From assembly GCA_001938485.1 (NCBI GenBank), contig MQRK01230892.1, positions 47,086 through 98,092 on the forward strand: a DNA stretch of 51,007 nt, written 5' to 3'. Positions 6,724-37,881 of the stretch are shown here, piece by piece. The notes under the pieces are model-generated. The model was not told where the DNA came from. It searched no databases and worked only from the letters and a program-made list of their open reading frames with translations. The position numbers and the translations under genes are program-made. The stretch comes from Girardia tigrina (lineage: Eukaryota). The stretch's first letter is position 1. Each line of letters starts with the position of its first letter.

Positions 6724-6769
<46 letters not shown>

Positions 6770-6898
6770 NNNNNNNNNNNNNNNNNNNNNNNNNNNNNNN
6801 NNNNNNNNNNNNNNNNNNNNNNNNNNNNNNNNNNNNNNNNNNNNNNNNNNNNNNNNNNNNNNNNNNNNNNNNNNNATATATATATATATATATATATA
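6724..6898. repeat. (TA)n microsatellite spanning an assembly gap
   Basis: TA runs on both sides of the N block. Confidence 0.9.
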
Positions 6899-6936
6899 TT
6901 AAATTCACAAGTTATTTAAAATAAAGCTTAACCCTA

Positions 6937-9100
6937 CCGTTTTGTCGCGTATAAATGTCGCACGCCATTTATTTGAGCAATTTGCACACAATCCATTTAT
7001 TTGAATAAACAACGCGCACAATTTATTCAAATTTTCACAAAAAAATTGAAAAAAATGTAGTTATTGCAAAAAATAGTAGTTAGGCAAAAAGTAGTTATTG
7101 ACTGGCAAATGGTATATAATGGATCAATATACCATAAACCCATAAATCCTAATACCATAAAATGAATTTACATAAAAATACAAATGTTGCACGATAGCAG
7201 AAAAACTTAGAATTATCAACAAGATCAAACAATCCAGAGATAGTATTAGAGCTGTTGCACGACAACATTCTATTCCCGAATCTACGATACGAAGATGGAT
7301 TTCTAGTGAAGAGGAATTAAAAAAACAGTTGTGAATCCGTCTATAAAAATCAGAGAGAGGCGGCGCTTGATTGGTGGAGGAAAAAAAGCAGAATTCCCCG
7401 AATTAGAAACAAAACTCTTCAGATGGATCACCAGTCGTAATGAATTAGGTTTAACAGTTACTACAAAATATATTAAAATTCAAGCACGATTTTTCAGAAA
7501 TGAAATTATTCAACATTTACAAAATCAATTCGNTGACAATTTNCCGAATCAACAACAAATTAGTTCGGAAATAGACAAATTGGAGGCGTTTGATGCATCA
7601 AATGGTTGGTGTTCAAACTTTAAACAACGATATAATTTGGTTCAAAGAGTGCAGACTACAGCCAGAAAATTGCCAGAAAATTACAAAATGATAACGATTA
7701 ATTTTGTAAATGAATGTGTGAATTTTATAAAGGAAAAAGGAATTAAAGAAGAAAACATAATAAACTTTGATCAAATTCCAAGACAATTCGAAAAAGAGCC
7801 CGCAAAAACAATAATAAACAAAGGAACTAAAGAAATATTTCTTCGAAAAGCAACGAGTAGTCATCATAAATACACCTTTACACCAACAATTTCTGCAAAC
7901 GGAAGAATTATCAATCAACATTTACTTTTTTCTAAATTAAAGAATCCCCCTACTGTAAAACCCGGATTCGATGTTGAGACTAATTCGACAGGAATGTCGT
8001 CACAGGAGATACTTAAAAATTATCTCCGAAGAGTCATCCTGAAACGCCCGCAGACATGACTAGAAAAGGAACCTGTTCTCGTAATTTGTGACAGTTATGA
8101 CTGTCATTTAGCAGTTTTAAAAGAAATTGAAGAGATCTATGCTAAGAAATACAATGTCTTTTTTAGAATTATCCCGCCGAACTTGACAGGGATAATTCAG
8201 CCCATTGATGTATGTTTTGGACGATCGTTTCAGTGCTTTTATGATGAAAAATATGACGATTATGTAACAATCTCATTAAATGATCGGTCATTGCAAACAA
8301 ATGCCGGACACATAAAAAAGACCAAATTATATGGTTTTTTCTGAATGGATCTCAGAATGGGCATCCTTAAAATCCCAAGAATCAATTAAAACAGCCTTTT
8401 ATTGTTGTGGAATTTTTAAAGACTTTAACATGGATAATCTTGGTATTTTACATCGATCATTACGAGTTTACTTTCAAAATTCAATTATCGAAGGAGAAAA
8501 AGATATTCTCGAGGACTTGGTTGTGGAAAATTTCTTTGAAACAAACACAATAAATTGGACGACGAGTAGTACCGTAAATTCTCTGTATAAAACTATTTAT
8601 GAAGCCCTTAAATTAACTTAAAATTACGATTTATGGCTTAAGAATATATTTATATCAATTGAAAATAAAATTTATGAGAATGAAGATTTAAGTGGCCTTT
8701 TGATGATGAAGAAAAAATGCTAATAAGGAGCGAAAAAATTTTCCAGAGCAAAGTCGAATTTGTTGTTTTGGTAGATATATTGGAAACTGATATTACATTA
8801 ACTATTCTTGATGATGATCTTAACATCAAAGATTCCAATACTTATAAAAGCAATTTTAAAGAGCGTAAGATTCAATTGCTATCTTATAGGGGGATATTTG
8901 TTTATTGTAATGAATATTGAATAAATTTCTTGCTCTATTTGTTTATTTAATTTTTATATTTATGGCCTTTTATATTTTTATTACATGTGTCATTTATTTG
9001 AGTGCGCCTATTATTCGAATTTTTTACAAAAATTTTCAAAAATTGTTACAATTAAAGAATTTAAATAAATGGCGTGCGTCATTTATACGCGACAAGACTG
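6937..9100 (+). mobile_element. Full-length pogo/Tigger-family DNA transposon with a disrupted transposase
   Basis: ~38-bp TIRs (ccgttttgtcgcgtataaatgtcgcacgccatttattt, 3 mismatches) with TA duplication at 6935-6936 and 9101-9102. Coding remnants: HTH, CENP-B HTH (FDASNGWCSNFKQRYNL) and DDE motifs NFDQ, ICDSYDCHL and IPPNLTGIIQPIDV. Several stops and frameshifts. Confidence 0.92.
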
Positions 9101-10670
9101 TAGCAATACAAACGAGTGATTTTTAAAATCACCTTTGAGCAAAATGTCACCAGTTTCAACCACATGTTTCGGAACATAGTACCAGTCAAGGAGTTTGAGT
9201 TTTACCTTTAATTTCATATGACTAGTTGAAAGTTAAAACAATAGGTAAGTTGCTACCTTGTCACACGCTGCGATTCATGCTTGAGAGGTGTGGTTGAAGA
9301 GAAAATCAAGTGTAGTAGGCATTAATCATAAGCGCAACGATATAACCTCTATCCTTCATATACGCGTGATGTGTGTGTGCGTACATATAAGGTCCTAGGT
9401 ATGTTTATGTTTGTGTGTGTAGTATATTTCGCCGTGCCTATTTGATGCAGCGTCTCCATTTGTCCTTAAGGTAAACAACCATTTTGGCTCTGCATCAACA
9501 AATGCTCATTATTCTGTCTATAGTAACAATGTTGGGACGACAAAGAGAGCTGCTATGCAGCGAACACTTCAAATCATTCCCCACGATGAAACTCCTAGTG
9601 AGCACTGTACGGATTTTGAGGACGGTCAACAACCAAATCCAGTGGAGCCTTTTTCAGACGAGGAGGAAGACAAATCTCCTGATGTAAATGAAAATGATGA
9701 ACTGATGGACAAAAATGGTATTCAGTGGTGCTGCACACCACCTGCAGTCTAGAGTCGAGATGCAAGCAATGTTATTCGAATCCGACCAAGCCCAAAACGA
9801 TCTGCTTATCGAGACAGCATCATTGAGACGTGGCACCTCTTCTTTCCCAACTCCCTACTTGAGAAAGTTGTACGCTACAGTTAAATGAAATCCAATGTAC
9901 AACAGCTGGATGTGATTTTCGATCTTGTGCCGCGGAAAGCTTTTATTGCCATTCAGTATCATCGTCTCGTGTTCGACGATCAGAAAATCCTGCTCTCAGA
10001 TCTTTGGGGCGAACATGTGGATGATTTTTCTCGAGAATCAATGTTAAAGAATCTTTACAGTGCATGGAACACATATATGTGCTTTAATGGCAAAAACGAG
10101 TGATAAAAGGTATGAAAAAGACACTTATGCGGCTTTTCACGAGGTATGGGAAGATTTTAATCAACTACTTCCACTACATTTTGAGGCAAGCGCAACAATT
10201 TTTATCGAAAAACAGTTGGTGAAATCAAAACGTCGCTCGCCTCATCGTACTTTAAACCCAGCGAAACCAGGCATGTACGGCGAAATGTTCCGTTGGGCTG
10301 ATAACAACGAATATCGATACGTCCATTGCGGCAGTTCTTTGCTCAGAAAACCAAACAATGCTGAAGCTGCAGAAGCTCCCGTTCATGGAAACAAGGGGTT
10401 CAACTTTGTACTGTATCGGACGGAACTCTTCGACGGCTCAGGCAGAAACCTTACAGGTGATTGATACTACACCTACTTCTGGAACACCCTCTGACCTACC
10501 TTGACCCACTCGTGAGCAATAAAAAAGAAATTCCACCACTTCTACAAAAGAAATTGCAGCTGCATGCATCTAAATTCGTTTTTGGTGGTCCCAAAAGAAA
10601 ATTTACTCTGTGCACATATGCGTCGAAACAAAAGAAAACGAACCACATACTTTCAATGCAACACCATGAC

Positions 10671-11092
10671 TGTGAGGAATATTTTTGATTGATGATTACT
10701 GTATGTTGTTTGGTATGTTGTGTTAGGATTGTGTTTATCCCATCCAGATGGAAGATTAATATTTTAAATATTTTGAAACGCCGAATTGTTTAATCAATTA
10801 TTAAAATTTTAATAATCTACTTTAAAATTAAATTAATAATTCATAAATAATATTTTAATAATATTTTTCTTAAGTAAATAAAACTTATTTTTAATTTAAA
10901 ATATAAATTATTTTTATAATCGAATTGTAAATTAAATTTGTTTTGTATGATAAGACGTTAAAGAATATTATTTAAAAACTTATCAATCAAGAATGATGAC
11001 AAGCTACGCAAGTTTTATGTAGAATTGTTCTAGTGGCAATTCAAATTATGATACAAATAAATGTAATGAAAACTCAATTAGTGTTCTCAATA
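10671..11092. mobile_element. Solo LTR (422 bp) inserted in the piggyBac transposase
   Basis: 5-bp TSD ATGAC at 10666-10670 and 11093-11097; ends TGTGAG...CTCAATA. Removing it rejoins piggyBac coding sequence (SMQHHD / EKLDIVLEYNR). Confidence 0.75.
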
Positions 11093-12413
11093 ATGACATG
11101 CAGAAGAAAAGAAAAACTGGACATTGTCTTGGAGTACAATCGAATAAAGACTGGTGTAGATGTCTTCGATCAGATGCGCCGGAAATATACCACCAAATGC
11201 ACAACTAATCGTTAACCAATCGTACATTTCCATAATCTCTTGGATGTTGGCGCGATAAATGCCTACATTATTTACATTATGAGTGTCATCCTGATTTGAC
11301 TGAAGCAACAATGAAAGAGAGAAGACTATTATTCCTGAAGACTCTGTACACTAAATTTTCCAGATAGTCTATGGAAAAAGACTGAAAGACAGGAATGTCT
11401 TGCAAAAGCCGCCTGTACTCATTTTGGAGAAATATGTTGGTACCACAGAAGCACCATACGTACCGGTAGATGATCCACGAAAGAAATTTCGATGCTCAAT
11501 ATGCAAAAAAAGAAGAGAAAGTTCCACGAAACTGATATCTTACGAAAGAGGAATGTCAAATTTGTGCTGATACCGTTTGTGGAAAGCATTCTACTGTAGT
11601 TGGAGTAGTTTTTAACACTTGTTCTCTTTCATGGAAACTTTTCATTCATGAAAAAAATAAAAATTAATGATAACTAGCTATGAAAAGTCTTTTTATTTTG
11701 AGGGATTTCGAAGTGATTTATAAAATTACCCGTTGGTATGGCTAGGTTGGATCCAAGCTTAATACGACTAGAATTAACTTTTATCTTTAGATTTTGGATA
11801 ATTGGTGAGACACTTACTGTCTTCACCAAATGATTTTTAATATATAATTGATAAAAAGATTTAAATATATAATTATATGTTCAGGTCTCGTACTTTCAAT
11901 ACTAATTTTCAGACTAATAATAAAGTGATTTTTCGTTAATTTTGCTGATTTCTTTTATACGTTTTGGAATCAATGCTCAATCTGTTGATCGGGGTTTCTT
12001 GCAAATACAATCCTTCCTGACCCGATTTAACCTTCTTTAATTAATAAAAAATAATTTTCCCTCGATAAATAAAAATTCCTTTTTATACTCTTCTTTTGAT
12101 AAATAATTAAGCTTTAATTAATTGATTCAATTATTTCTTGTAGTTAGAAAATAAATGGTTGTTTAAATAATCATCATTGATTGTGTTATATTTAAATATA
12201 TTTTTATGATGATTAGTTCTCCTGATTTTACTGGCGACCACTATCAGGACAATAAAATGAATTTCAATGCAATTTCGAAGATGGAAGAAAGAAGAAGAAT
12301 TTTCGCAAAACTTCCTCAATCAGCGCAGGAAATTTTGGCGCCGAAAGTTGCTTTTTTCGATGGACAGAATCAAGATCTGAAGAAATGGATTGAAGAAACA
12401 ACGTGGACAGGAA

Positions 12414-12575
12414 GCCCTGTCTCCTTGTTACTTTGGTAAGATTAGAACTGTCTGTCAATTTATCATTTAAGGCACTCAGAGATTCTCCTCGTAGAATTAC
12501 ATCGTTAATGCTTTTCACCATAATTCTTTGAATATCATTCAAATTAGAATTAATTTGATTAAAGCTTATTGGTGT
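12414..12575 (-). pseudogene. Captured SEC22-like R-SNARE motif fragment
   Basis: INSNLNDIQRIMVKSINDVILRGESLSALNDKLTDSSNLTK resembles SEC22B [41 protein letters not shown] (recalled), including the zero-layer R in RGE. Confidence 0.8.
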
Positions 12576-12923
12576 TCGGGTGTAAACAGAAAATAAGTTC
12601 AAACTCGAATAGTCGGAGAAAATTTTCCTTCGAGACATTCACGAAAACAGTATAGTGATAATATTAACATGAAAACTACTCTATTCTGGAAAACGACCAA
12701 CGTTAACGAGAGTATTCAGATTTGTTGCATCAAATTTGCGTAATTTGTCAAAAGAATTCAGAAAAATGTACACCGCCGACCAATTTTTGGCTGTTATGAT
12801 TTTATTTAATTTTTTTAAGAAGTCACTGGAATCTCGACACGATACGTTTTGATTATCTTTCTCTTGAAATTCCAATTTGTATAAGATCTCATCATATAAT
12901 TTTTTATCTTTTTTTAAATTCAT
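12540..12923 (-). pseudogene. Captured ORC5-like (origin recognition complex subunit 5) gene fragment
   Basis: LYDEILYKL...VSCRDSSDFLKKL...VYIFLNSFDKLRKFDATNL...VNIITILFS*MS resembles ORC5 LEQILNKL...TCETFNDFVRLF...VYIVLDKAEYLRDMEANLL...NVTVLFLSEIV (recalled). Two in-frame stops; boundary approximate. Confidence 0.6.
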
Positions 12924-15900
12924 TTAAACACTGACAAATTCTCTTTTTATAAATTGATTTAATTGTTTTCAAATTTTTTATTCCAACTTTCATTCAAAAT
13001 TCAACTCACTTTTTTTAACAATTTATTGTGACAAAATTTTACATTTTTAAATTTAACACACACAACACACATAACAAACACACATTTATCCAATCATTTA
13101 TTCATACATCATATATTCCTTACACACAAACACACTCCATTCACACAAAAATCAAACAAATGAAATACATACTTGCATTCAAAAAAAGAAAAAAAGAGGC
13201 TCACCATTTCGATTTAATTATATTGTGATTACATAATTTGACGTGGTGTATTAAAACTTTGGACAGTTCAAATTGATTTAACAATGTTCAAATTTACATT
13301 AATTAAATCGATAGGAGAAATTTATTTTAAATTACAATTTATCTATATATTATGAAAAAGCCAATTATTAATTTTATTTTAACTTTTTTAATTATTTTTC
13401 TTTAATTTAATTGATTTATTTAATTACTTAATTTAATTATATATTTTATTTATGAATTCCTGAAACTGGCAAAAATGGTCAGTCAAATCGGTAATTCTCC
13501 GCTCCACAACGGATTTCGCCATATTCAATCAGATGGATCTCTCATTTGCATTCTATATGCTACTTAAAGGTGACTCTAAAGTTTTATGACAGGAATATTA
13601 TGGTCATAATAAAGATCTGACAAACAGCGCAGTTACAGAGAGCTTTTCTAATTTTTTTCAAAACCAAGGAGCATAAAGTAAGAGATCTTTGTGATTCAGC
13701 TAAGTGTGCGAAAATTGATGCAGGAAGTATTTGAGAGTCAGATCTCAAAAGAAGAAATTATTTACGCTTTCATCGTTCAAGGATTACAAAATTCGAAATT
13801 AAAAGAAACTCTTATCTTGTAACCGAAGATTCCAAATGAAAGATATCGAGAATGTTGCGTGTTGGAAGAGGATTGGATCTCCAAAACTTTTTTCATCGAA
13901 TGTAAGATTAATGGGTATTTTCTCACCTAAAGATGAAATGTGTATTGGGAAATGTAAGGTGCAGATAGCATGGAATTCAAGAAATTCATAGATCGAGATT
14001 TATATCGTCAAAAGCCTCGTACCAGCTTTTTTTGGAGGAATCGATACGATGCAGAAATTTAGAATGGGATTGAAAGAAATTTTTATTATTGAAACAGGAA
14101 ATAAAATTAAACAAATTGACAACAAGAAATCTATCAATAAATTTCTCGAATGTTTTCCAGATATGGATAGTGAAATGAATCTGGATACAGATACCAGTTT
14201 TTCAGCGGTTGGAGGTGTATTAAGTCAAAGACAGAAGGATGGTTCAGAACAAGTTATTGCGTATGGATCTCGAACTCTGAGTGATCCTGAAAAGGCTATT
14301 GTCTGACAAGAAAAGAATCTTGGTACTTAGAGCTTTTATGTTGCACCTCAAACATTATTTTTACGACAGGAAATTCATAGCTCGTACTGATCATAAAACA
14401 CTTGTTTTTATGAATATGGCAAGAAGATCCGTCAGTCCACAATTTCAGACTTGGTTGGAAGATTTATCCTCTTTTAATTTTGAATTGTTATTCAGGAAGG
14501 GATCGGATCATTCAAATGTAGATAGAATTTCACGAATAGCAGAATCTCTGTGTGCACAGTGTATTAAGAAGCACATTGGAGCAAAGGCAATCAAAAACAA
14601 AGTTAGGTATTTAAATACACTAAATGTAGCAGATGTTCTTGATATTTCAAAAATACAGAAAACGGATAAAGATATAAGTGAGATGATAAAATCGTTAGAA
14701 TTGAACAAACCACCAACACTGGATATGCAAAAAAATCCGTTATGGTCGTTTTTGGATCAGATGGTAATTAAAGACGGTCAATTATGTTTCAATGATGGAA
14801 ATAGTAAGCAATTAGTATTTCCCGAAGCTGGTAAACGACAGGTAGTAGAGCTTATACACCATAAATTATGTCACCTTGGTTCAAAAAACTTTATGAATAC
14901 ATGAAAGACATTTATTTTGAGCAAAAAATGAATTAATCAATAAGGAAAATATCGCAAAAATGTGAAGTTTGTATTAGGAGAAAAGTTACAACGACACCTA
15001 CGGAAGAAGCATTTTTACCTTGAGAAGATTTTCAACTATTTGAACAAGTGGTCATGGACATTGCTTACATGACAGTATCAAAAACTGGTAAAAAAACATG
15101 TTAGTATTAATTGACAGGTTCAGCAAAGTCGTCGTTCTAGTAGCCTTAAGAAGCCAAGCAGAAAGGTTAATAACTAGACCAAATCCTTCTTGCCAGAGAG
15201 GGGTAAAACATTTGAAAGCTCTAAATTGAAACATTTGTGTCAAAAATTTGGTATTCAGCAAGAATTTTCTTTTCCATACCAACATCAGTTTAATGGATTG
15301 ACTGAGCGTACTATTCGATCTGTTCGAGATATGTTGGTAACTACTTTAGAAAGTCAGAAATCGTCACTAGATTGGGAAGATTTACTTCCAAAAGTGGAAT
15401 TTTCTTTGAATACGACTTGGCAGAGTGCAGTTGGTATAAGTCTATGTGAAATACTATTTTGACAAAATCTGGAGACACATAGGATATTTAAGAAGATGGA
15501 ACAGTCTCCATTAAGAACAAAAGCGCAAGGAAATACAACGATTCCATTTAACCGGTTGCAAATGCAAAATGATAAAAAGCGGAGTCATTGAGTTTTCAAT
15601 GTGGGAGAGGAAGTGCTAGTGAAAGTAGATCCACACAAATGTCGGAATGCGGGAATGAGGTACGAAGGCCCATATCAGATTGTAAAGTTTCTTACTCCAC
15701 ACCAAGCGCTGTTGAAAATTGGAAGTAAATTAAAGCTACGACGAATTGAATGGCTTAAAGAATATGTTCATTCGCACAACGAAGAGGAGAGGAAAGTTAG
15801 AAAATAAATGGTTGTTTAAATAATCATTATTGATTGTGTTATATTTAAATATATTTTTATGATGATTAGTTCTCCTGATTTTACTCTTGTTATAGGATTT

Positions 15901-16892: not shown

Positions 16893-19800
16893 ATGGAAAG
16901 CGGGTTGCTTATCACCAACATCAAGTCGACTATCGATGAAGTGATTTTTTATGACTTTTCAATTGAATTTTTCAACAAAACTCGTTAATCTGTATCCCAG
17001 AAAACGATTCGCAGTGGATTCGAAGAGTTCGGAAAGATTCTCTATTTCAATCTATTGACAGATAAATTCAACGGGAAAACGAAAGTCTGGTGAGTAATGA
17101 AAATTGATTGTTGTTCGTGGAGAGAGAACTGATATTGATTGTCGTTGTTCCCATTCAGCTATTTGAACTACGGCAGCAGCGAAGAGGCTATGAAGGCGCT
17201 CCAGAAATACGACAAATCGATGATCTACGGGGAACCGCTGAGGATCTCGTTCAAGAAGATCGTGTCGAGTTCCGAGAGAGGTTGAAAGAGGCCCATTGGG
17301 AGCAGCGTTCTTCCATGATCGACTTTGAGAATACTCTCAGTTCAATCGAGAGAGAGAGAGCGATTTTGTTGTCGCTTTTTCGACCATTTGGGAACTGCTT
17401 CCTGTCTGCTCCCACCGCTAGAATTTATAATTAATAATCTATTTTATTATGTTTAAATTATTTATTTATTATTTAACTATTTATTTTTTAATTATGATTT
17501 AACTAATTAATAATTTGTTTAATTAATATAATTTCTTATTTAATTAATTGATTTATTTAATTATTCATTAATAATTTATTTAATTAATTAATTATTACTA
17601 TATTCATTATTTAACTATTTTATTTATTATTTTTAATTATTTATTTAATTAATTAATTTTTAATAATTCATTTTATTATTTATTTATTAATATATTTATT
17701 ATTTATCTTTCATTTAATTATTTATTTTTAATTATTCAACTAATTATTAATTTATTATTTTTTTTAATATTTAATTATTTAATAGTTAATTTAATTATTT
17801 ATTTAATAATTTCAAATTATTAATTGTTTTATTTTATTTTTTGATTTATTTTTTAATTCTTCAATTTTTTAATATTTAATTTAATTTTTTATTTAATTAA
17901 TTAGTTTATTTTATTTTTTTAATAATTTATTTTATTTATTATTTATTTAATTATTCATTTAATTAATAATTTAATTTATTAATTGATTTACTTATTTTAT
18001 TAATAATTATTTATTTATTCAATTATAAATTTAGGTGGGACAGATCGGAAGTCTTTATTAATTAATATTATTTAATTATTTGCATTAATTATCAGAGTTT
18101 TTGCGGCTTAACATTTGGGGAGAATTTGAGTGACATGATATGCAATTATCTTTATTTCGATTTATTAATTAATTATTCTTAAATGTCAATTTTATTTATA
18201 TTTTAATATTGAAATTCATTTACGTATCTAATTATTATTATTCATTAAGTGATTTATTAATTCTTGTTATTATGTATTAAATTGTTTATTAATTATAATG
18301 AATTAATATTATTTATATTTTAATTATTTATTAAAATTAATTTATTTAATTATTATTCGTTTAGTTATAGATTAATTATTCTTTTCTAATTATTTATTAA
18401 TAAGAATTCTGTAATTATTTATTGTCCTTGTTCGCGTCTTCAAAGAGGGCTTATCCAGACAATCACTATTCTGTTGACTCGCACTTTGAATGGGGCTTCT
18501 TCCTTCACCACTACATTTGCCAGGAAAGTCTCACAGATTCCAGTTGTTCTGACTGCACACCATGGGCTGTCACCTAATTTCACCAATCAAGAAGGGTGCA
18601 CGAAAATTGAACACAGTTTTCTGATACCCATGGATTTCAATTTGTTTCAGAACTGTCTCAACACTGTTGACAGCATTTTTAAGTTAATTCGACGCATTTC
18701 GTCCATCATCTTCTCTAATTTTTCATCAACTTTATCAAAAATTTCTTCTTGCTGAACTGATTTATCTTGATTAATGACGAAGGTGCAACCACCTTCAAAC
18801 TCTCTGATCCATTATTTAACAGTTGTCAGAGACGGGGGTCACGTAGGTAGGTGACTGCAAAAATCTTAGATATCACAGCACGTCTTATTCTGCAACACAA
18901 ATAACTTGATGATACTTGGCTATTCACCGTCTGAAATCATCGCTGACGAAATTCAAAAATGTCGCCATAAAAATTTCAATAGGTTTGATAAAATAAAACA
19001 ATTACTGATATTATAACTATTTAATCGTACAAAAAAACTAAAATTTACTATTTCTTTTTTTCACCTTAGATTGGGTACTCTTTGAGCGCATCCCAGATTT
19101 CCGTATTTCACGGCAATTTTCTGTTTCAGAAGATTCGCTGCTTCTGTCTGTTTCGTGTTAATTCTTGTTTTTTTTAAACTAGTGTCCATACAGATCTCCA
19201 CACAAAAGTTTTTTTGAAATTGTTACTAACGTAAAAGCAAATTATAACCGGTAATTCCTGTTCCATCTGAGTCAGTACTGGATCTTTAATGATTTGAACA
19301 AGTAAATCAAAAAAATATTTTTAACTACTTATAATTTATAAGTAGATATCTTACAATTAATATTGTTCTAGAACTCAGAATATTCCGTTTGTTCCCATTT
19401 TGGGACTTAAAAATTTTTTTTCCACCAAATTTTCCCATAATCATTTTATTGTCATTAATTAATTTATTGTCATCGAGAATGAATAAGTGTGCAAAGATGG
19501 GAGAAAGTCGATTGAGTAAAAGACCTTCAAAAACAGGTTTCTAAATTCCATGGATACATATATATATATATACGTGTGTGTTATGCCGAATTCGTGAATT
19601 AGGCAAAATATTTTGCGGAGTTCACTAACTATATGAAAAATTATCAATTTAATATGAGAAAATATATTAAATATGAAAAAATCTCAATTTATTATGCAAA
19701 ATAGACTTCAAATGTAAAATTTTTATTCATGATTATTTAAACTTCATTGGTGGCAAGATGAATTGCAAACGTTTGTATTTTAAATGCATTTTATAGCAAA

Positions 19801-22800
19801 ATGATATTTTTTATATTAAATTGATATTTTTTCATATGAGATGTTGATATCAATTTCATAATTGAATTAAAAACTTTTAAAAAATATCAGCAATTACATA
19901 AATTATATATATTAATAATTTATATAATTAATGTAATTTTATATAAAAAGTGAGCTAATAAAAAGAATAGAAAAATAGAATAATGTTTAATTAAAAGAAG
20001 TTTATTCACATTTTAAGATAATCAATTAAAAAATTTATTTTTCGAAAGTTTTTTCATATCGAACTGAAAATGTGGTCCAAATATGTTCTTCGATAGCCGT
20101 TATGATTTTGCTGACAGAAAATGTCGTTTTAGGATAGTGTTTTCTTGATTTTTAACTTTTATCCACAATCTTATTATCCATCTTTCATGCATTCTATCAA
20201 CATATCGATCAATCAATGATAAATATTAAAATTTATATATGTATATTTATTCTTTCTGCTCTTTTCATAGATTAATGCCTTCTAAAATGGCCATGTTTTA
20301 TCAAAATGAAAAATGGTAAATTTTCATTGACGAATTATCATTAATCTTGTTAGGTTTTCAACCATAACTTATATATTTAGCCAATGTTTGTTTGTGGCTC
20401 ACACTTGATAATCTACTTAAAACTGTAAATAGATAATTAATATTATATATATATATATATATGAAAACAACATTTTTCTTTCTTGGGTAACATAAAAATA
20501 TAAATTTAATAGATAATAATATAAATTTCTCAACTACGCTTTCTTGGTTGAACTGGGAAATTATGGAAGAAATTTCGTGGCTCTATTATTGAGGGGTGTC
20601 AATTAATCAGCGCTCGTTTTCAGCCCCTATAAACGGACACCAGTCAGCACCCGTGCCCAGGAATCCGAGTTTTGGCCGAGGTCGAGGAATGGCTGGTGAT
20701 ATGATCAAAAGCTCCCGGGGGGCACCAACAGGATCACCGATCGTACTGCGTACTCTCGATATTCCACTGAATGTAAACTTGATTTTTTTATCTATTATAA
20801 ATTTTTTTTAAATTTCATGCCAAAATATCGCAAGTAAAAATTATTCTAACTTTGTCAAGTCATCGAGAGTAGGATGTGTGCTTAAATATGGATCTCATCG
20901 TTACTTAATACAACTAGTAAATCAAAAAAATTAAATTTATATATCCATTCTTTATGCAGACAGAACTCTACTTTGCCAACAGAGATTTTAATTAAAAAAA
21001 ACACATTAAAAATTAATATGAACTACTTCTAATTTATAAATAGATGTATTGCAATTAATATTTTTCGATAACTCCGAATTTTCCGTTTTTGCCATTTTTG
21101 GATCTTAAAATGATTTTTTCCATCAAATTTTCACATTGTCATTTATTGTGATCGAGAATGAGTAAGTGTGCAAAGTTTGAAGAAAATCGATTGAGTAGAA
21201 GGCCTTCAAAAATAGGTTTCTAAATTCCATGGATACACACACATATTTATATATAGAAATTAAGTTAATAAAAAGAATGGAAAAAACTAATATTATCAGC
21301 ATGAATTATCTCTAATTGTAAACTTTTCGATTTTAATATACGAGGGGCGTTCCGAAAGTAAGTGGAAATACTTATATGCGGGTGTGCGCGTGTGTGTGCA
21401 TCTTACAGAGGGACAGATGGCGTGGAGGCGTGATGTACTTACCAGCCAATAGAAATCGAGCCAAAGTGGCATTGGTCCATGCAACATGTGAGCAGCATAG
21501 AGGAAACTGTCATAGGCAGTGTTTTCATTTTTGTTTAACACATGGAAGACGCAGTACGCTCTCAGCGTACCATCATCTTTTTCCTTTGGAAAGAGGATAC
21601 TCCAGTGTCTGACATTGTGCGCCGCTTATCAAATGTGTTTCAAGGAAGAGCCCTGCAAAAACGAGCACGGTAGAAAATGTGGAAAGTATCGGAGACCATC
21701 AATGCAAATCGCTGCCTTACCAAGTTTGACAGTGGTGAGGATGATGAATGACATTGTATTCCTTCAATAAATTCTTTCTTGTGGTGTCGTCTCCCTTTTT
21801 TCCACTTACTTTCGGAACGCCCCTCGTATCTATACATTTGTTTACAGTTGATCATTGGAGAATATTTCCTTATGAAATTAATGTAGTGTGAAGTACAGAG
21901 AAAAATTGGAAATGATTAGGAATAATATCGCTCTAATTGTTGTAATATTCGGGTTTAAACCAGAAATTAATCTTAATTTGATGCCGTAAAACGATCCTAA
22001 TTTTGAGACAAATAAAAATTTAGAACTTGCTTGTACAAATTATATGAACGAAGAAAATGTCTCCAGATATCAATCTACAATCATGATACAATCTTTTCCA
22101 GAATCTCGCTAGAAAAATGTTTTAATTCGTGTTTTCTTTAGAGCAATCAGGAATTACAATATCTAAATTTCTCCTCGTTGGTGGGATAAGGATGATGGGG
22201 GATCTGTCGTAGGGATTTCAAATTTCTTTTTCTCCGATATATAAGCTTCTAGAGAAACCATATTCGTTGTACTGTGATATATTTTTCTTGGTTTCTCGAT
22301 GCTTGTTTCATTTTTAGCTGGATTCGCACAATGAGAATGTTCAGTTACTGCACGACCTTCAGAATTATTACTTAATAATACGTGACCAGAACATATTTTT
22401 TCAAGAAGTCTTCATGATTATCTTTATTTTTAATAGCCAATCAGTACGCGCGTACGCAGGGGGATTAGGGGATTCATCTTGAACTGCATATTATTAAAAA
22501 TAACTTTAAATGTTTAAGTTTAAAAGGTGAAGTATCCAAAATTTTTTAAAAATTTGAGAAAATCGCATCCGAAAAATTTTAATTATGATCTTTTTTTTAA
22601 AGTTTTTTAAATGAATATAAGTTTTGTAGATAAGTAAGTCCTCCTATTTATAGATTCCAGTAATGAATAATGGATAAGGGAACCTCACGTCGTATGAAGA
22701 TATTAAGCCAGAAGCTTTTTAGGAGGCCTGGGACGCTGAGGATGCTCAAAAAACACTCCCCTATTGTAGAAATAGACATGGTTATCAACCGCCGACTAAC

Positions 22801-25800
22801 CGACTTCATCGCAACACCGCTCATCAAGATTGATTCATCGAGAATCCTTGTGATTGCGAGGTCACACTGCCCACAGCCTTCACACCCAGATTAGAACGCC
22901 AGAGCCTTGTAAGTGGATTGCAAGACCACTGTCACTACAATAGTCTATCAGCACAGATATCGGCTAGCTTATTAAAAACTTTATCCTAGGAGTCGAACCC
23001 ATTCTAGTTTCCGAGGGACACTACGTGGAACAATGTCTGTCTGGCTTGTACAGTTGATCCTTTAATGGCTATGCAATATTAGTTAGGCTAAATAAAACTT
23101 TATTGGCAGAGTGACGATGGGGAGGCGTCATTGTACTAATCAAAATATCTTTCAATGGACTTTATCCATTGAATATTTGTAACTGTCATTTATATCCTAC
23201 AATTCTCAATGTGTTGAAGTTATTTGCAACTTTACCAGTAACAACAGTCACAGCTGAACCATCTTTTTCTACATAACACAGAATCAAGACTTACGAAGCA
23301 CGACATCAGAACAGAGATTGAATGGTTTAGCTATAATGAACATTCACAAAGAATTAATGGTTTTCTTAGAGATTGACAAAGTTATAGACACATTGGTGAA
23401 GAACATAAGACTTATGCTTCTATTTTTATTGTATAACTGTATGTAATTATGTTTATAAAATCTATTAAATGTGGTATTATCAATGCTATTATTTTAATAA
23501 TTAATTTAAATTTTTAAAGAAAACATATATTGGGTAATAGTATAACTCCCCCTTCGAAATAATTTTATGCGTACGCGCCAGCCAATCAGTAGCAACTTCT
23601 GACATTATTTTCTCTGTTGCTACGTATATTGCATATATTAGTTTATTTTTTCAACCAATAAACACAATTTTTATTACATTTAAAAACGTATCGTTTATTT
23701 ATTTAATTTTCATTAAACTTTTACTAATTCCAATTATGAAGCATTTGATATTTTTTTGTTATGAAACTCGGCTAGCGTTTTATGATAAAAAATTCCTAAT
23801 AAATATTTTATACGCTTTCTGTCGATAAAACGACAATCATTTTTTGATAAACTGTTAAGAAATTACTGTCGTAAACTTTGATATTAATCCATATCCAGAC
23901 GAAAACACCTGTGGAAATCATTGAATTAACGGATTTGAATGCAATACTAGCAAGGCCGATCTTGTTAACAGAGAGTTCAAAATCTCATTTGACAGAGATT
24001 CTCGGTGCTGTAAATGAGAACGTGAATACATTAGTGGATGTACGTGTGCCAGAGATCGGCGGTTATTATCTCGCCAAATGGACTGAAGATAACAATTTCT
24101 ATCGGGCAAAATTACTGGAAAAGAGCGGTAATAATTCGTATAAGGTTTGTTTTGTCGATGAAGGTACATCCGGAGATATTGTGAATGAATTGAGAGAGAT
24201 TCCAAAGGAGATATCAGATTTTCCGTGTCAAGTAAAGTCTTACTAGTGTGATGGGGTAAAGTTCAATGTGTCTATTGCAGTTTATTTCCTGCACAATGGA
24301 CTGTGAAGATTCACCTGAATTGATGAATCTCATAAAGGTTAGCGGCATTGACTCATCTGTGAGTGTTTATGTGACTAGCTCCGATTTCGCAGATGGAAAA
24401 TATCAGATCAATTTCTTTGTTGGCGGTTCGTTCGATATTTTTACATTCTTTTTCAATATTTTTTTTCTGTGATAATTTCATTAATTATTCTTTATATCAT
24501 ATTATAGTTCATTTATTCCTTTTTATAATTTAAAAAGGGAGCAGAAAGAGGGAATGTATACTAAAAATTAATATTACTATTTTTGTAAATGTTAGCAAAA
24601 TCTTTTTCATAGAAATTAACAATCACTATAAAATTTTGATTCATACCAATATTGATAACGTTTCCTGCTAAAATTACTGATTAAGTTTTATAGCTAATCT
24701 GTGTTCGCGCTTTTCTATCAAAGTTGTCAAAAGATTTCAATGCGAAGGCCCCAAAAGACCTTTTTGTCAAAGGAAGTGTACAAAACATCGTGTTGGAAAT
24801 CGTGTTATGCCCAAATATCTGACTTGCTTATTTACAACTGCTGGAGCTTCATGGATAATTTCTGGATAGCATAATCATGAAATATAAAACGCCAATCAGT
24901 CTGTTTGTCTCTGAAAGCAAACATGATTCTGCTGGAATGAGATTCTCTTATGTATCATGAAAACTTCGTTGTGGATCCTCTTACAACTCTAACAATTAAG
25001 CGTTGCCATTTAGCTACTGCAACAGAAGTGAAAGTAAAAAATACTTTCATTCGACTATCTTAATTCCTTAATCGACTTATGACTGCACTACGAGCTTATT
25101 TTGAAGGTAATATAGCGTCTTTTGATTATTAGGTTTATGAATTAGAATGATTATACTAATTTTACATTCACCAGGGATTTTTTAAATAATGTAATTATCT
25201 TTTTAAGTGTGAATATATAAATATTTAAATCAAATAATATTTGAAATTGAATGACAAACGCGCTGATAATATAGGTGCCCATGAATTGAGGTTGTAAACA
25301 ATTTCAAACAATATTCTGATACAGATTTTGTTATAGGTTTTCCATAAATCCTACTGTGTTATTTAGGGTTTTCTATACCTTGAAAACATTGTTTCTGTTT
25401 TTTAATTATACTTGGTTCGGTTTTACGACTTGTAAGGATTTTATATCGCTCAAAATCCTGATTCTCAATAATTTGATTTTAAATTGCAAGCATTTAAATT
25501 CTAATTTGAAATTATACTTTTGTATATTGCGGAAATTTTTCAAATATTTTTAAAAATTAAAAATGTTTTAAGATTTATTATTCAAAAGATATTAACATAA
25601 TTTAATAATTTTTGAATGCTTTGTCTTATTGTACAAGAAATTTAATTATTGTGCTAATTTTTTAGGGATATCTATTTAATTTTCTTGTCAAATTGAGTCT
25701 AAATATTGTAATTTATAGTTCATTTTAAATAGAATTAAATAAATTGCCTTGTATAAATCTTTATCAAGTTTCGATTCATGTATTTGGTTGTTGCATAAGT

Positions 25801-28800
25801 TCCCGCCGTTTTTTAAACATTTATTGTCAAAGAAATCAAAGAATTTTAACAACCAAAATAATGACTCACTTAATTATTTTGGTTGTTGAAATCATAAAAT
25901 TTTAACAGCAAAAATGATAACACCTCAATCAATTATGTACTCTTCTTCATTGTTCACTACTTCTTCCCATCTTTCCACCAGTTTGTTGATTCTATTTCGC
26001 CAGAAATCCTTAGGTCGAGTGTCGAAGATGTTGTTGAGCCAATTCTCAATATGATCCTGATTTTCGAAGCTAAGACCCCTATTTCATTTGCAAGGCAGCG
26101 GAAGAGATGGTAATCCGTCGGGGCGAGGTCTGGGGAATAGGTAGGATGTTGAAGGACATCCACACCGAGCTCTTGGAGTGCCATCTTGACAGTTTTTGCG
26201 GTTTGTGGTTGAGCATTGTCATGGAGGAGGATCACCTGGCCTTGTCGATCCGGTCTTTTTTGTTGAATTGCCTCATTGACTCGATGCAATTGGTCTTTAT
26301 AGAGATTCTTTTCTACTGTGATGTTCTTTCCAAGCATTTCCCAGTGGATTAGACCTTCCCAATCCCACCATACGCAAATCATTGTCTTCATGGGGTGCAG
26401 GTCTTTCTTGATCTTGGGCTTAGGCTTCTTTCTTCCGGAACGAGGAGCGTCGTTGAGGTCGAAATTATCTCAGCTATAGTGTCCTCTACACGGCACAAAA
26501 ATCTTGCTTTTTGACCTCGATTAAAGGCGAAAGGGTGTCGAAAATGCGATTTCTAAAAAAAGACAAAAAATTAATATATACAAAAACGATTACTTTAATC
26601 TTATAGCGCATAGCATGGGCTTTCTAATGGTATATAACACTTCGCCAAACATCAAAAAGTCTTTGTAGAACAAATAGTTTCATATAACGGCGGGAACTTA
26701 TGCAACAACCCAATACATACAATTGAACATATCTGATCCGTCCCTCTTTAATCAGACAGGTCCAAAAATCCCCACATTTCAATCACGGTTGTTCTGACTC
26801 TATTCTGGCATATTTTAAAATCCCCTGCCATATCGGGATACCCAGGTTCTTCTGTATAGAGGATGGTCATTAAATCACTGTTAGAATACAATACGGTGAA
26901 AATGTCAATAGTTAGATTAATTTAATTATACAATACAAACTGTCAATCAAATGAAAACATTTTGCAACATAATGTGCATTTATTTTTCAGTTTAGTGATG
27001 TTTTTTTGTGTCTAACTAACTACCAAATAAGAGATAAAGTTGATAAAACCGGTTCCATAGGGCATGCTAGGCGATGTGGCTGACTTTCAACCATTTATAC
27101 AAAATACAATAATTTTCTTGTTGAGAGTCCGCAAACATTAACATCTATAGAAAATCATTACAGATTACTACATAAACATCCACCATGTATATTTGATACC
27201 AAGTTTCTTGAAATTATTATATTACATATCAAATTACAAAATTACATATCAAATTTTAGTTTAATTTGTGTTCAATTCAATTTTCAACTCAATTTTTGTG
27301 TTATGCCGAATTCACTATTTTAAATTCATGAAGTTGAAAGAAATATTTTTAAAAAATTCAATCTAATATGAAAAATTCGGAATCTATATCCGTAATCACT
27401 CAAGTACAATGTTCCCCCACTTTGAATCGAAAAATTGGTCTTTTCTGACATACCCAAGTATAACGCTCTCCGTAATTTTTTATGAAAAAAAATTTTATTT
27501 TCCACAGTATTTCAATCAGATTCCATCAAAGTAATCATCACTGTCCCCAAAAAGTTTATGAAATTCCTCCGGAGTCAGTCTTTCTTCTGTATCCGAGTTA
27601 GGCTTAGCTTGGTCTTCATCTTTTGTGCCATCCATTTTGTTTGAGATACCAGGCTTCTTTGAACTCAGTAGAGACTAGAGATCAGATTCATCTAAGCCAT
27701 CAATTTTGGCTTCATTCTATCCTTTAATAGTTTGTTCAGGACGACATCCAGAGGTTGCAGGACACATGTCTAGTCACAAGTAATCATTCCTTATGGTGTT
27801 GAGAGAAGCAGATTTTTATTTGTCAGTCATGTGTACTCTGAACTGGTCCCACACTAAATGGAATTTCTTCAAGAAAACTCGAGGCCTGCTATTTCAAACT
27901 TGATTGAGTTACAGCACGATTCCTTTTTCATCCGTCCGCCCTTTGGGATGCACATGGATCACCACACCAGCTGGAAATTACTAATTGGGAGAGACGAGGA
28001 TATTCATTGGACTTAGTTTATCTACGGCAAATAATTATGACTCGCAGTCTCGCACTGTATTAAACTGCTGGATAAAATACCACTAACGTACCAATAAAAT
28101 TTATTGCATAACTTGACTTTGCAAACTGGGATTTCTCACATACTCAAGGGTAATGCTCATCCAATTTTCGATGCAAATCGGGAGTGAAAATGGGAGCATA
28201 CTTGGGTGATTACGCTGTGCAAAATTTTATTATGAATAATTCTGAATCTATGAATTTTTAAATTGACTTTTTAAAAAATATTTTTTCAACTTCGTGCATT
28301 TAAAGTAATGCGGAAATTGGTAACCAGACAGTTCGACACAAGACAATTCGACACAAATTTTTTAATTCGACACAAATTTTTTAATTCGACACATTTTTTT
28401 AATGGGACAAATATTTTCGACATTTAAATTTCGATTTAGTTTTTTTTAATTCGACCAATAACTAAAATGAAATATTTTTATTACTACACATTTTTTGAAA
28501 CTCGACATTTTCAATAACTATATTTTTGGTTAGACTAATAAGTTTTTCTGTATTTAATATGAAAAAAATATCAATTTAATATGAAAAAATTAATTTTTAT
28601 GAAAAAATATGTATTTAATATGAAAAATTTTAATCCGACACATTTATTAATTCGAAACAAATTTTTTAATTTGACACATTTATTAAAAAATAATTAAAAT
28701 TAAATCGACAATAAGACGACATAAATTTTTTAATTCGACACAGTAAAAGTTAATTTTTAACATTTTATTCATTGCAAATTAGCTAGCCAACGCAAGTATT

Positions 28801-36502: not shown

Positions 36503-37881
36503 GGCGCGAACTAATTTCGCTAAAGAATTAATTTCGTCAGTGGACTAATTTCACTAATGCTAATATTATTTTGGTTATTATTAATGAATGATATTGTAGA
36601 AAAAAATAATTAATTAAAAATTGTAAAAAATTAAAGTAAAATTGTAGACAAAGGTAAATTAATCCTTCAAATTACATAAATAAATAAAATAAATAATTGC
36701 TGTTAAAGTGATTAATAATTTTAATAATAATGTAATTCTATTTTTACAACAAAATTACAATTTTTATAAATATTAAAAATATACACAAATAATGCATAGA
36801 CTAAACAACAATTGAATATAACTTGAACAACCTTTCATAACATAACTCTGTATATAAAAATAACGCAATATTATGAATGAAAAATATATTTCACTACAAA
36901 TATTTTTTTGTTTATAAAATATCTTTCTTTTCGACACAAAATTAAACGTCTTGAAGACCACTGCTGGTCTAAAATATTGATTGAATTGCAGGTTCAATCT
37001 CCGAAATGTTCAAGTGCCTGCAAAGAAATTGGAATGAAGTGATTTCATTATTTATTAAACTATCTTTGAGCTTGGAAGAGATATTTGATAGAATATTAGG
37101 ATCACACTGTCTAGTAGTTTCAAGTTTATTTCTACGCAAACTCTCTAGTCTCATGTGATCAATAATGTTGCTCAGAGTTTTAGTGAAAACCAATGAACCC
37201 CAAATTTCATCCTTCGTTTCTTTTTGGAGGTTTCGGAAAAATAGTTGGTAAAGATCGTGGAATTGAACCAATTGATAATGAAATCAATTAGTCATGTCCT
37301 TTCAAAGTAGAGATGAAAAGAGGCTATTTTGTTTGTTGTTGTCGAGTTCCGATTCTTGTTTGTTTCAATGTACTAAATAATGTAAGTATTTTATCAGAGG
37401 GCAAAAATCCAAGCGCCATTATCAAATTTATCAGCTGGTTAAATTCTTTATTGCGAATGAAAAATATTTTAAATCAAGTTTCCTTACAACGGCCTGTTTA
37501 AAATGAAAATAGCAGCTTTGACAGGTAATCTGTGAAAATATTTCACGAAATGTTCTGATTGAATTTTTTCAAAGTCCCCAGTTGCCAATGAAGGCGAAAA
37601 TTGAGGTACTACATCTTTTATTTTCTCAATAACCAACTTGTAATGTTGATGGTGCCTAAATTTCATCAAGACAAAAAATGTTGGCAACATTTATTTATTT
37701 GTGTAATTTGAAGGATTAATTTACCTTTTTCTACTATTTTACTTTAATTTTTTTACAATTTTTAATTAATTAATTTTTTCTACAATATCGGCTATCATTA
37801 ATAATAACCAAAATAATATCAGCATTAGTGAAATTAATCCCCTAACGAAATTAATTCTTTAGCGAAATTAGTTCCGTAACC
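36503..37881 (-). mobile_element. Mutator-like element with ~170-bp TIRs and a transposase remnant
   Basis: Left arm gaactaatttcgctaaagaattaatttcg...ttattattaatga is inverted at ~37710-37875. Protein remnant FSPSLATGDFEK...FREIF...CYFHFKQAVVRK. TSD not recognisable. Confidence 0.85.

What the first reader, a model, noticed from the sequence alone, without database searches (positions are those of the whole stretch)
12414..13587. Antisense in-frame ORC5-SEC22 chimeric host-gene cassette carried inside an LTR retrotransposon
Seen: gag is interrupted by ~1.17 kb of foreign DNA bounded by an 8-bp direct repeat GACAGGAA (12406-12413 and 13588-13595), with no TIRs. On the minus strand one continuous frame (12923 to ~12414, two internal stops) runs from an ORC5-like AAA+ segment straight into a SEC22-like R-SNARE motif. 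Known: multi-gene fragment capture is typical of plant Pack-MULEs and Helitrons and much less often described for animal LTR elements. Inference: this is a 'pack-LTR' that shuffles fragments of unrelated housekeeping genes. LTR-driven transcripts would be antisense to ORC5 and SEC22 and could yield trans-acting piRNAs or siRNAs.
Basis: partly seen in the sequence, partly recalled or inferred. Interest (0 to 1): 0.85.

Follow-up and report, generated by a model that had tools for sequence, protein, structure and literature searches.

The report
Decayed two-gene fragment inside dead retrotransposon
A broken LTR retrotransposon carries, in reverse orientation, a decayed patch of DNA in which a piece of an ORC5-like replication gene is fused to a piece of a SEC22-like vesicle-fusion gene. 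The patch is real, but this kind of structure is already known in animals and nothing here shows that it does anything.

Summary
The sequence facts hold. A 3.7-kb Ty3/gypsy-like element (12142-15885) has 91-nt LTRs identical at 90 of 91 positions and a 5-bp target duplication, CTTGT. About 1.05-1.17 kb of foreign DNA sits just after its leader.

On the minus strand, one frame with two stops runs from an ORC5-like AAA+ piece (12899 to about 12585) into a SEC22 R-SNARE piece (about 12581 to 12414).
- **SEC22:** significant (Pfam above its cut-off; SEC22b E=4e-8).
- **ORC5:** supported only at profile level (E=2e-4).

Three points are weaker.
- **"gag":** assigned by position only.
- **Right boundary:** lies anywhere in 13459-13587.
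- **The 8-bp repeat GACAGGAA:** about 0.09 such matches are expected by chance.

The remaining 0.55-0.69 kb of the insert is AT-rich non-coding DNA. The ORC5-like part differs from its nearest relative evenly over codon positions, so it is decaying neutrally.

Capture of fragments from two genes between LTRs is already described in flies, mosquito, fish, chicken and mammals (PMC5131818), always by a sense-oriented route. The antisense orientation and the non-coding filler here fit a DNA-level nested insertion better.

I found no second copy, no parental gene and no expression data. The "pack-LTR" and piRNA readings are untested. Interest is low to moderate.

The parts
12137..12141 (.). Left copy of the 5-bp target-site duplication (CTTGT) of the LTR element
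   Evidence: the same pentamer directly flanks both LTRs
12142..12232 (+). 5' LTR, 91 nt, with AGT...ACT ends
   Evidence: identical to the 3' LTR at 90 of 91 positions
12232..12244 (+). Primer-binding-site-like TGGCGACC... directly after the 5' LTR
   Evidence: read directly from the sequence. No tRNA was available to test complementarity, so this is an inference.
12248..13990 (+). gag-like region of the element, assigned by position only. It is interrupted by the nested insert and further broken to the right of it: its open pieces lie in all three frames, which implies at least two frameshifts, and none exceeds 62 codons.
   Evidence: open pieces; no family or structure match
12406..12413 (.). 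Left copy of the 8-bp direct repeat GACAGGAA. It is also one arm of a 6-bp palindrome, GACAGG-aagc-CCTGTC (12406-12421).
12414..13587 (-). The left end is good to about 6 nt. The right end lies somewhere in 13459-13587.
12414..12581 (-). SEC22-like R-SNARE fragment of about 56 codons, matching SEC22b residues 129-182. It has no longin domain and no membrane anchor.
12585..12899 (-). ORC5-like AAA+ fragment of about 105 codons, matching roughly ORC5 residues 74-185. The Walker A region is not included. The frame shared with the SEC22-like part holds two in-frame stops.
12900..13458 (.). AT-rich non-coding filler, 8-30% GC. It contains a short CA-rich repeat and AT-rich minisatellite-like DNA that resembles the array at 17435-18033.
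13459..13587 (.). About 40% GC stretch of uncertain ownership: it may be insert or element
13588..13595 (.). Right copy of the 8-bp direct repeat GACAGGAA
13992..15804 (+). pol remnant. RNase H lies at about 14154-14475, followed by integrase, with its core at about 15092-15459. No protease or reverse-transcriptase domain was detected, and too little DNA lies upstream of RNase H to hold them. The remnant is broken by about three frameshifts and at least three in-frame stops.
15781..15794 (+). Polypurine tract directly before the 3' LTR
15795..15885 (+). 3' LTR
15886..15890 (.). Right copy of the 5-bp target-site duplication (CTTGT)

Best explanation
The insert is a dead, neutrally decaying patchwork of three pieces: AT-rich non-coding genomic DNA, a fragment of an ORC5-like gene, and a fragment of a SEC22 gene. 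It sits in reverse orientation just behind the leader of a defective Ty3/gypsy-like LTR retrotransposon that lacks reverse transcriptase.

Most likely history (inferred):
1. The intron-free, codon-sharp ORC5-like/SEC22-like junction arose earlier as a chimeric processed pseudogene or cDNA patch.
2. A stretch of DNA containing it, together with adjacent non-coding DNA, then entered the element at the DNA level. This could have been end-joining or templated repair of a break, or insertion of an unrecognised element.
3. That event left a short direct repeat or microhomology at the ends.

The insert encodes no protein and is passive cargo. Whether it entered before the element's last transposition, and so travelled with it, cannot be decided from this single copy.
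For: Shown:
- The element is real, has a 5-bp duplication, and runs on the + strand.
- The cassette is antisense to it.
- The ORC5-like part ends, and the SEC22 alignment begins, within two codons of each other, in one frame.
- Homology to all three relatives (L001, L002, L003) begins abruptly at 12899. Upstream of that point lies unrelated DNA of 8-30% GC, part of which resembles a nearby AT-rich array.
- There is no poly(A), no terminal inverted repeat, and no TC...CTRR ends.
- The frame holds two in-frame stops.
- The 19 differences from the closest relative fall 7/7/5 over codon positions, with 11 non-synonymous changes, 4 synonymous, and 3 codon differences involving a stop.
- The known RT-mediated route gives captures that are co-transcribed with the element, usually in sense, and that replace internal element sequence (PMC5131818).
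Against: - A precise in-frame junction of two unlinked genes is just what multi-switch reverse transcription produces (PMC5131818).
- The element lacks reverse transcriptase yet has near-identical LTRs. That fits a non-autonomous derivative copied in trans, perhaps with the cassette already on board.
- With only 91-nt LTRs, one mismatch dates the insertion very loosely.
- The parental genes were not found, so exon borders and junction microsimilarity could not be examined.
Confidence: 0.5

Rival explanations
1. True LTR-mediated capture ('pack-LTR'). During reverse transcription inside the particle, the enzyme switched from the element's RNA to other RNAs and back. This built the chimera in one event, and the resulting non-autonomous element was then copied in trans.
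For: - Two unlinked gene fragments are joined without an intron, in one frame, between intact LTRs.
- The element lacks reverse transcriptase but keeps LTRs identical at 90 of 91 positions, plus its target duplication.
- Precedent exists in animals, including a two-gene chimera and secondary retroposition (PMC5131818), and in maize Bs1 (PMC13317346).
Against: - The cassette is antisense, while co-packaged mRNAs would be copied in sense.
- 0.55-0.69 kb of the insert is AT-rich non-coding DNA rather than mRNA-like sequence.
- No second copy was found.
- A repeat flanking the insert is not what a replacement-type switch leaves behind.
Confidence: 0.22
2. Nested insertion of an unrecognised mobile element that makes 8-bp target duplications (hAT-like, or a Pack-TIR type). 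That element already carried the gene fragments, so the LTR element was only the landing site.
For: - An 8-bp direct repeat lies exactly at the end of the SEC22 homology on the left.
- Gene-fragment cargo in TIR transposons is known in animals (PMC8277862).
- The window is full of DNA-transposon remnants.
Against: - There is no terminal inverted repeat of 7 bp or more.
- No other copy exists in the window.
- The 8-mer is common in the window, with about 0.09 chance matches expected.
- The right boundary is not independently fixed.
Confidence: 0.15
3. Assembly artefact: the junctions join reads from different repeats.
For: The region is repeat-rich and the window contains N runs.
Against: - The nearest N runs are about 4.9 kb to the left and about 16.8 kb to the right of the insert.
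- Both LTRs, the PBS-like site, the purine tract and the 5-bp duplication form a coherent element around the insert.
Confidence: 0.05

Closest known systems
LTR-mediated retroposition chimeras of metazoans (Tan et al. 2016, Genome Res, PMC5131818), e.g. the two-gene retrocopy in a Pao-type element of Drosophila melanogaster
   Same: Partial, intron-free fragments of two unlinked host genes are joined and lie between the LTRs of a defective LTR retrotransposon. The paper proposes that such loci can behave as non-autonomous elements.
   Different: - Here the cargo is antisense to the element.
- It includes a long AT-rich non-coding piece.
- It looks like an insertion rather than a replacement of internal sequence.
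- Microsimilarity with the parents could not be examined.
- The copy is old and decayed, and no second copy is known.
Maize Bs1 retroelement (reviewed in PMC13317346)
   Same: An LTR element without its own reverse transcriptase carries fragments of several unrelated cellular genes fused into one frame.
   Different: Bs1 is a plant element. Its cargo is in sense, and it forms a transcribed and translated hybrid ORF. Here the frame is broken and antisense.
Pack-MULE / Pack-TIR transposons, including those of animals (PMC8277862)
   Same: Gene-fragment cargo bounded by a short direct repeat.
   Different: There are no terminal inverted repeats and no family of copies. The carrier here has LTRs.
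Templated or filler-DNA insertions at repaired double-strand breaks (my own knowledge, not tested here)
   Same: A patchwork of unrelated pieces in either orientation, with short repeats or microhomology at the junctions and no transposon ends.
   Different: Such insertions are usually shorter. The mechanism cannot be proved from one locus.
Gene-derived copies in repeat-rich loci that yield silencing small RNAs against the parent gene, e.g. W-linked PxyMasc copies in Plutella (PMC9674220)
   Same: A gene fragment embedded in transposon-rich DNA could give antisense small RNAs.
   Different: There are no small-RNA data here. The parent genes are unknown, and the only near relative is 93% identical, with a longest identical run of 34 nt.

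Membership tests
Ty3/gypsy-type LTR retrotransposon (the carrier) | Two direct LTRs flanked by a 4-6 bp target-site duplication | tested here: met
   The 91-nt LTRs are identical at 90 of 91 positions, and CTTGT lies on both sides.
Ty3/gypsy-type LTR retrotransposon (the carrier) | Domain order RT - RNase H - integrase | tested here: inconclusive
   RT_RNaseH and RT_RNaseH_2 matches lie upstream of an integrase-core match, which is weak (rve_3, E=0.011). No RVT or protease match was found, and too little DNA is left upstream to hold them.
Ty3/gypsy-type LTR retrotransposon (the carrier) | A gag gene recognisable by homology | tested here: not met
   No Pfam or PDB match to any open piece on either side of the insert. 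'gag' is positional only.
LTR-mediated retroposition chimera (PMC5131818) | Host-gene sequence between the two LTRs of one element | tested here: met
LTR-mediated retroposition chimera (PMC5131818) | Cargo in the same orientation as the element, as expected from co-packaged mRNA | tested here: not met
   pol lies on the + strand and the cargo's coding sense on the - strand.
LTR-mediated retroposition chimera (PMC5131818) | Cargo is processed mRNA only and replaces internal element sequence | tested here: inconclusive
   The ORC5-like/SEC22-like junction is intron-free. However, 0.55-0.69 kb of the insert is AT-rich non-coding DNA. Without relatives of the element I cannot tell replacement from insertion.
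LTR-mediated retroposition chimera (PMC5131818) | Microsimilarity between element and parental mRNA at each switch point | not testable with these tools
   The parental genes were not found.
LTR-mediated retroposition chimera (PMC5131818) | Secondary copies, i.e. the chimera mobilised as a non-autonomous element | not testable with these tools
   There is no other copy in the window. The source genome is not in the searchable collections.
Cut-and-paste DNA transposon with 8-bp duplication (hAT-like / Pack-TIR) | 8-bp target-site duplication | tested here: inconclusive
   The repeat is present, but about 0.09 chance matches are expected and the 8-mer occurs six times in the window.
Cut-and-paste DNA transposon with 8-bp duplication (hAT-like / Pack-TIR) | Terminal inverted repeats | tested here: not met
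   No inverted repeat of 7 bp or more links the ends.
LINE-mediated processed pseudogene | Poly(A) or a LINE 3' tail at the 3' end, next to the duplication | tested here: not met
   Neither end of the insert carries an A or T run on either strand.
Helitron | 5'-TC ... CTRR-3' ends, insertion between A and T, no duplication | tested here: not met
   The ends read GCCC... and ...TTAT on the + strand, and ATAA... and ...GGGC on the - strand.
SEC22 (longin R-SNARE) | R-SNARE motif closest to SEC22 | tested here: met
   Pfam Synaptobrevin scores above its cut-off. SEC22b matches at E=3.8e-8 and the next SNARE at E=0.15.
SEC22 (longin R-SNARE) | N-terminal longin domain and C-terminal membrane anchor | tested here: not met
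   Only SEC22b residues 129-182 are represented. An ORC5-like piece lies upstream and element DNA downstream.
ORC5 | ORC5-type AAA+ N-terminal domain | tested here: inconclusive
   - The profile scores E=2.2e-4, on ORC5 only.
- A relative matches the Orc1/Cdc6 model at E=1.3e-6, far below its cut-off.
- The fold model has pLDDT 50. ORC5 chains are among its top hits, but none is significant.
- There is no Pfam match.
ORC5 | Walker A region and ORC5 C-terminal domain | tested here: not met
   The fragment starts after the Walker A region. No relative with an ORC5 C-terminal domain was found among 1.84 billion representatives.

The most novel reading that the evidence does not exclude
The cassette-bearing element is a trans-mobilised non-autonomous LTR element present in several copies. 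Its LTR-driven transcripts, antisense to an ORC5-like and a SEC22 gene, feed the small-RNA pathway and dampen those genes or their paralogues. It would then be an antisense counterpart of the sense-oriented LTR-mediated retrocopies already known in animals.
Probability: 0.06. Interest if true: 0.6.

Novelty: new member of a known kind. Interest (0 to 1): 0.3.

Why it matters
If the cassette had travelled with the element, it would add an antisense example from an unsampled lineage to the known LTR-mediated exon shuffling of animals. It would also give a candidate source of small RNAs against two housekeeping genes.

As it stands it is one decayed copy. Its main value is as a worked case:
- Gene-fragment cargo inside an LTR element does not by itself show capture by that element.
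- A short flanking repeat needs cassette-free copies before it can be called a target duplication.

Tried and rejected
**Searches for the chimera, its parents or further copies.** None found the chimera.
- The word-indexed protein search with the SNARE-bearing ORF found nothing.
- The same search with the ORC5-like piece found only P0002.
- The all-against-all representative search gave three real relatives, all short metagenome ORFs.
- The JGI metagenome scan by protein found nothing.
- The scan with a degenerate DNA pattern across the ORC5-like/SEC22-like junction found nothing.
- Exact look-ups of window ORFs found nothing.

**Taxon.**
- The Tudor ORF gave a single 31% relative from one sequencing run.
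- The sample codes appear in no paper.
- Rfam and tRNA scans were empty.

**gag.**
- Pfam and PDB searches of every open piece on both sides of the insert were empty.
- One apparent hit to designer pentatricopeptide proteins is a sum of ten insignificant repeat matches, and I rejected it.

**Structure.** The AlphaFold model of relative P0004 from a 5-row alignment reached only pLDDT 50. The fold search gave no hit below E=0.001.

I removed that row and sent it to no other remote tool afterwards.

**Transposon signatures.** Helitron, hAT/P and LINE signatures were looked for at the ends of the insert and are absent.

**A second candidate boundary pair.** A 6-bp repeat, ACAACG, lies at 12398-12403 and 13506-13511.
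- It fits the reading-frame register of the open pieces on the two sides, which the 8-bp pair does not. That agreement is expected one time in three.
- A 6-mer pair is itself expected by chance.
- I therefore treat it only as a sign that the right boundary is not settled.
Full report
**1. The carrier element**

- A 91-nt direct repeat lies at 12142-12232 and 15795-15885, identical at 90 of 91 positions.
- It starts AGT and ends ACT. A TGGCGACC primer-binding-like site follows it, and a 14-nt purine tract precedes the 3' copy.
- The whole unit is flanked by the pentamer CTTGT on both sides.
- Inside, on the + strand, Pfam finds the RNase H domain of retroelement polymerases (E=4e-11 and 2e-9). 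Downstream is a weak integrase-core match.
- No protease or reverse-transcriptase domain is found, and the DNA left upstream of RNase H is too short to hold them.
- The pol remnant is broken by about three frameshifts and at least three in-frame stops.
- This is therefore a defective, non-autonomous Ty3/gypsy-like LTR retrotransposon, 12142-15885, on the + strand.
- No part of it has a second copy in the window.

**2. The observation**

- GACAGGAA is at 12406-12413 and 13588-13595.
- The minus-strand frame from 12923 past 12414 has two in-frame stops.
- **SEC22.** The 3' part matches Pfam Synaptobrevin above the curated cut-off (28.8 against 26.4 bits). It matches SEC22b in the PDB at E=3.8e-8 over residues 129-182, well ahead of any other SNARE. 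The SEC22 call is sound.
- **ORC5.** The 5' part has no Pfam match.
  - Alone it reaches only E=0.2-0.3 against the PDB, but its three best hits are all ORC5, residues 74-138.
  - A search of 1.84 billion representatives gave three true relatives: P0001, P0002 and P0004.
  - A profile of these plus the window piece hits ORC5 alone at E=2.2e-4, residues 33-140.
  - P0004 touches the Orc1/Cdc6 model at E=1.3e-6, far below its cut-off.
  - A low-confidence fold model (pLDDT 50) puts ORC5 chains among its best matches, but none is significant.
  - 'ORC5-like AAA+ fragment' is therefore supported, with moderate confidence.

**3. Anatomy of the insert**

- DNA of the relatives (L001 at 92.9% identity; L002 and L003 at 80%) starts to align with the window exactly at 12899. 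Upstream they are unrelated to it.
- The relatives themselves continue upstream into the N-terminal part of the ORC5-like protein, which the window lacks.
- P0004 stays collinear with the window and L001 up to about 12585. The SEC22b alignment begins two codons later.
- On the minus strand the insert therefore has three pieces:
  - 13587-12900: unrelated DNA. 12900-13440 is 8-30% GC, and 13320-13458 resembles the AT-rich array at 17.4-18.0 kb.
  - 12899 to about 12585: ORC5-like, about 105 codons.
  - About 12581 to 12414: SEC22-like, about 56 codons.
- The ORC5-like/SEC22-like junction is sharp, intron-free and in frame. An in-frame join is expected one time in three by chance.

**4. State of the cargo**

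- The shared frame has two stops.
- The closest relative, L001, is open at the corresponding codons and has one in-frame stop of its own elsewhere.
- The 19 differences from L001 fall 7/7/5 over codon positions, and the 37 differences from L003 fall 13/14/10. This is the neutral pattern. The fragment is not under protein-level constraint.
- The fragment lacks a Walker A region, an ORC5 C-terminal domain, a longin domain and a membrane anchor.

**5. Boundaries and the 8-bp repeat**

- The left boundary is good to about 6 nt, because SEC22 homology runs to at least 12420.
- The right boundary has no independent support.
  - AT-rich array-like DNA runs to 13458.
  - 13459-13587 has the same GC content as the element's leader.
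  - No open piece on either side matches any gag family or structure.
- The 8-mer occurs six times on the + strand of the window. About 0.09 chance matches are expected between any 8-mer of a 29-nt left zone and a 254-nt right zone.
- With fully shuffled sequence, 32% of trials give some 8-mer pair.
- A 6-bp pair, at 12398-12403 and 13506-13511, fits the frame register of the flanking open pieces better. It is itself expected by chance.
- The repeat may be a target duplication, a microhomology, or chance. Only cassette-free copies can decide.
- The insert ends carry no inverted repeat of 7 bp or more, no poly(A), and no Helitron ends.

**6. Mechanism**

- The known animal route is template switching by the element's reverse transcriptase onto co-packaged mRNAs (PMC5131818). 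It produces:
  - partial, sometimes multi-gene, intron-free cargo;
  - cargo that replaces internal element sequence;
  - microsimilarity at the junctions;
  - cargo co-transcribed with the element, mostly in sense.
- This locus shares the multi-gene, intron-free cargo and the defective carrier.
- It differs in being antisense and in carrying more than 0.5 kb of non-coding AT-rich DNA.
- I therefore favour a DNA-level nested insertion of a pre-existing chimeric pseudogene patch, at 0.5. I keep single-event RT capture at 0.22, an unrecognised transposon with an 8-bp duplication at 0.15, and misassembly at 0.05.
- Near-identical LTRs around a heavily broken interior hint that the element was already defective when it last inserted. 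With 91-nt LTRs, however, one mismatch dates the event too loosely to say whether the insert was already there.

**7. Novelty**

- Gene-fragment cargo in LTR elements is well documented: maize Bs1, and rice and sorghum surveys (PMC13317346).
- In animals it includes two-gene chimeras (PMC5131818).
- The antisense orientation is the only unusual feature, and it points away from capture by the element.
- The small-RNA idea has precedent in principle (PMC9674220) but no data here.

**8. Context and limits**

- The window is about 30% GC and transposon-rich, with pogo-like, piggyBac-like and mariner remnants and two Tudor-domain ORFs. That points to an animal genome, but I could not determine the taxon.
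- I do not take the window for human.
- I left the N runs untouched.

Noticed in passing
window 29784-31112 (+) and 23875-24243 (+): Two Tudor-domain ORFs (Pfam TUDOR, E=1e-25 and 3e-12). The longer one, 443 codons, sits in a 50% GC island within 30% GC DNA. It has only one relative, at 31% identity, among 5.8 billion protein clusters.
   Followed up: partly
window 7310-8618 (+), 9423-11570 (+), 25960-26469 (-): Remnants of three DNA transposons: pogo/Tc5-like (HTH_Tnp_Tc5), piggyBac-like (DDE_Tnp_1_7, weak) and mariner (Transposase_1). The LTR element lies in a transposon graveyard.
   Followed up: partly
window 12406-12421: The left junction of the insert forms a 6-bp palindrome, GACAGG-aagc-CCTGTC. 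One arm is the 8-bp repeat and the other lies in the last SEC22-like codons. It could be a trace of the joining event or chance.
   Followed up: no
L001 (ENA ERZ2271742), L002 (ENA ERZ2272490), L003 (JGI 3300013315): - The only relatives of the ORC5-like piece are short metagenome contigs.
- L001 has its own in-frame stop and lacks the stretch around the Walker A region that P0001 and P0004 have.
- In L003 the ORC5-like N-terminus runs into 200 unrelated, serine-rich codons (P0006).
- The 'ORC5-like' family may itself be a set of fast-evolving or decaying copies rather than the replication gene.
   Followed up: partly
window 17435-18033 and 13320-13458: An AT-rich minisatellite array with periods of about 65-91 nt. 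A 140-nt stretch inside the insert is 74-79% similar to it. The similarity is low-complexity, so it is only a weak hint of a local genomic source.
   Followed up: no
window 36508-36688 / 37690-37874; 28530-28607 / 29209-29286; 50002-50062 / 50432-50492: Three pairs of long inverted repeats, 79-95% complementary, enclosing 0.4-1.2 kb. They look like MITE or foldback-type elements.
   Followed up: no
window 19462-19572 / 21141-21251: A 111-nt direct repeat, 88% identical and 1.7 kb apart. These may be the LTRs of a small terminal-repeat element.
   Followed up: no
window 6741-6899: The near-perfect 'inverted repeats' reported here are an artefact of the N run at 6770-6875, which sits inside a TA-type simple repeat.
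   Followed up: yes
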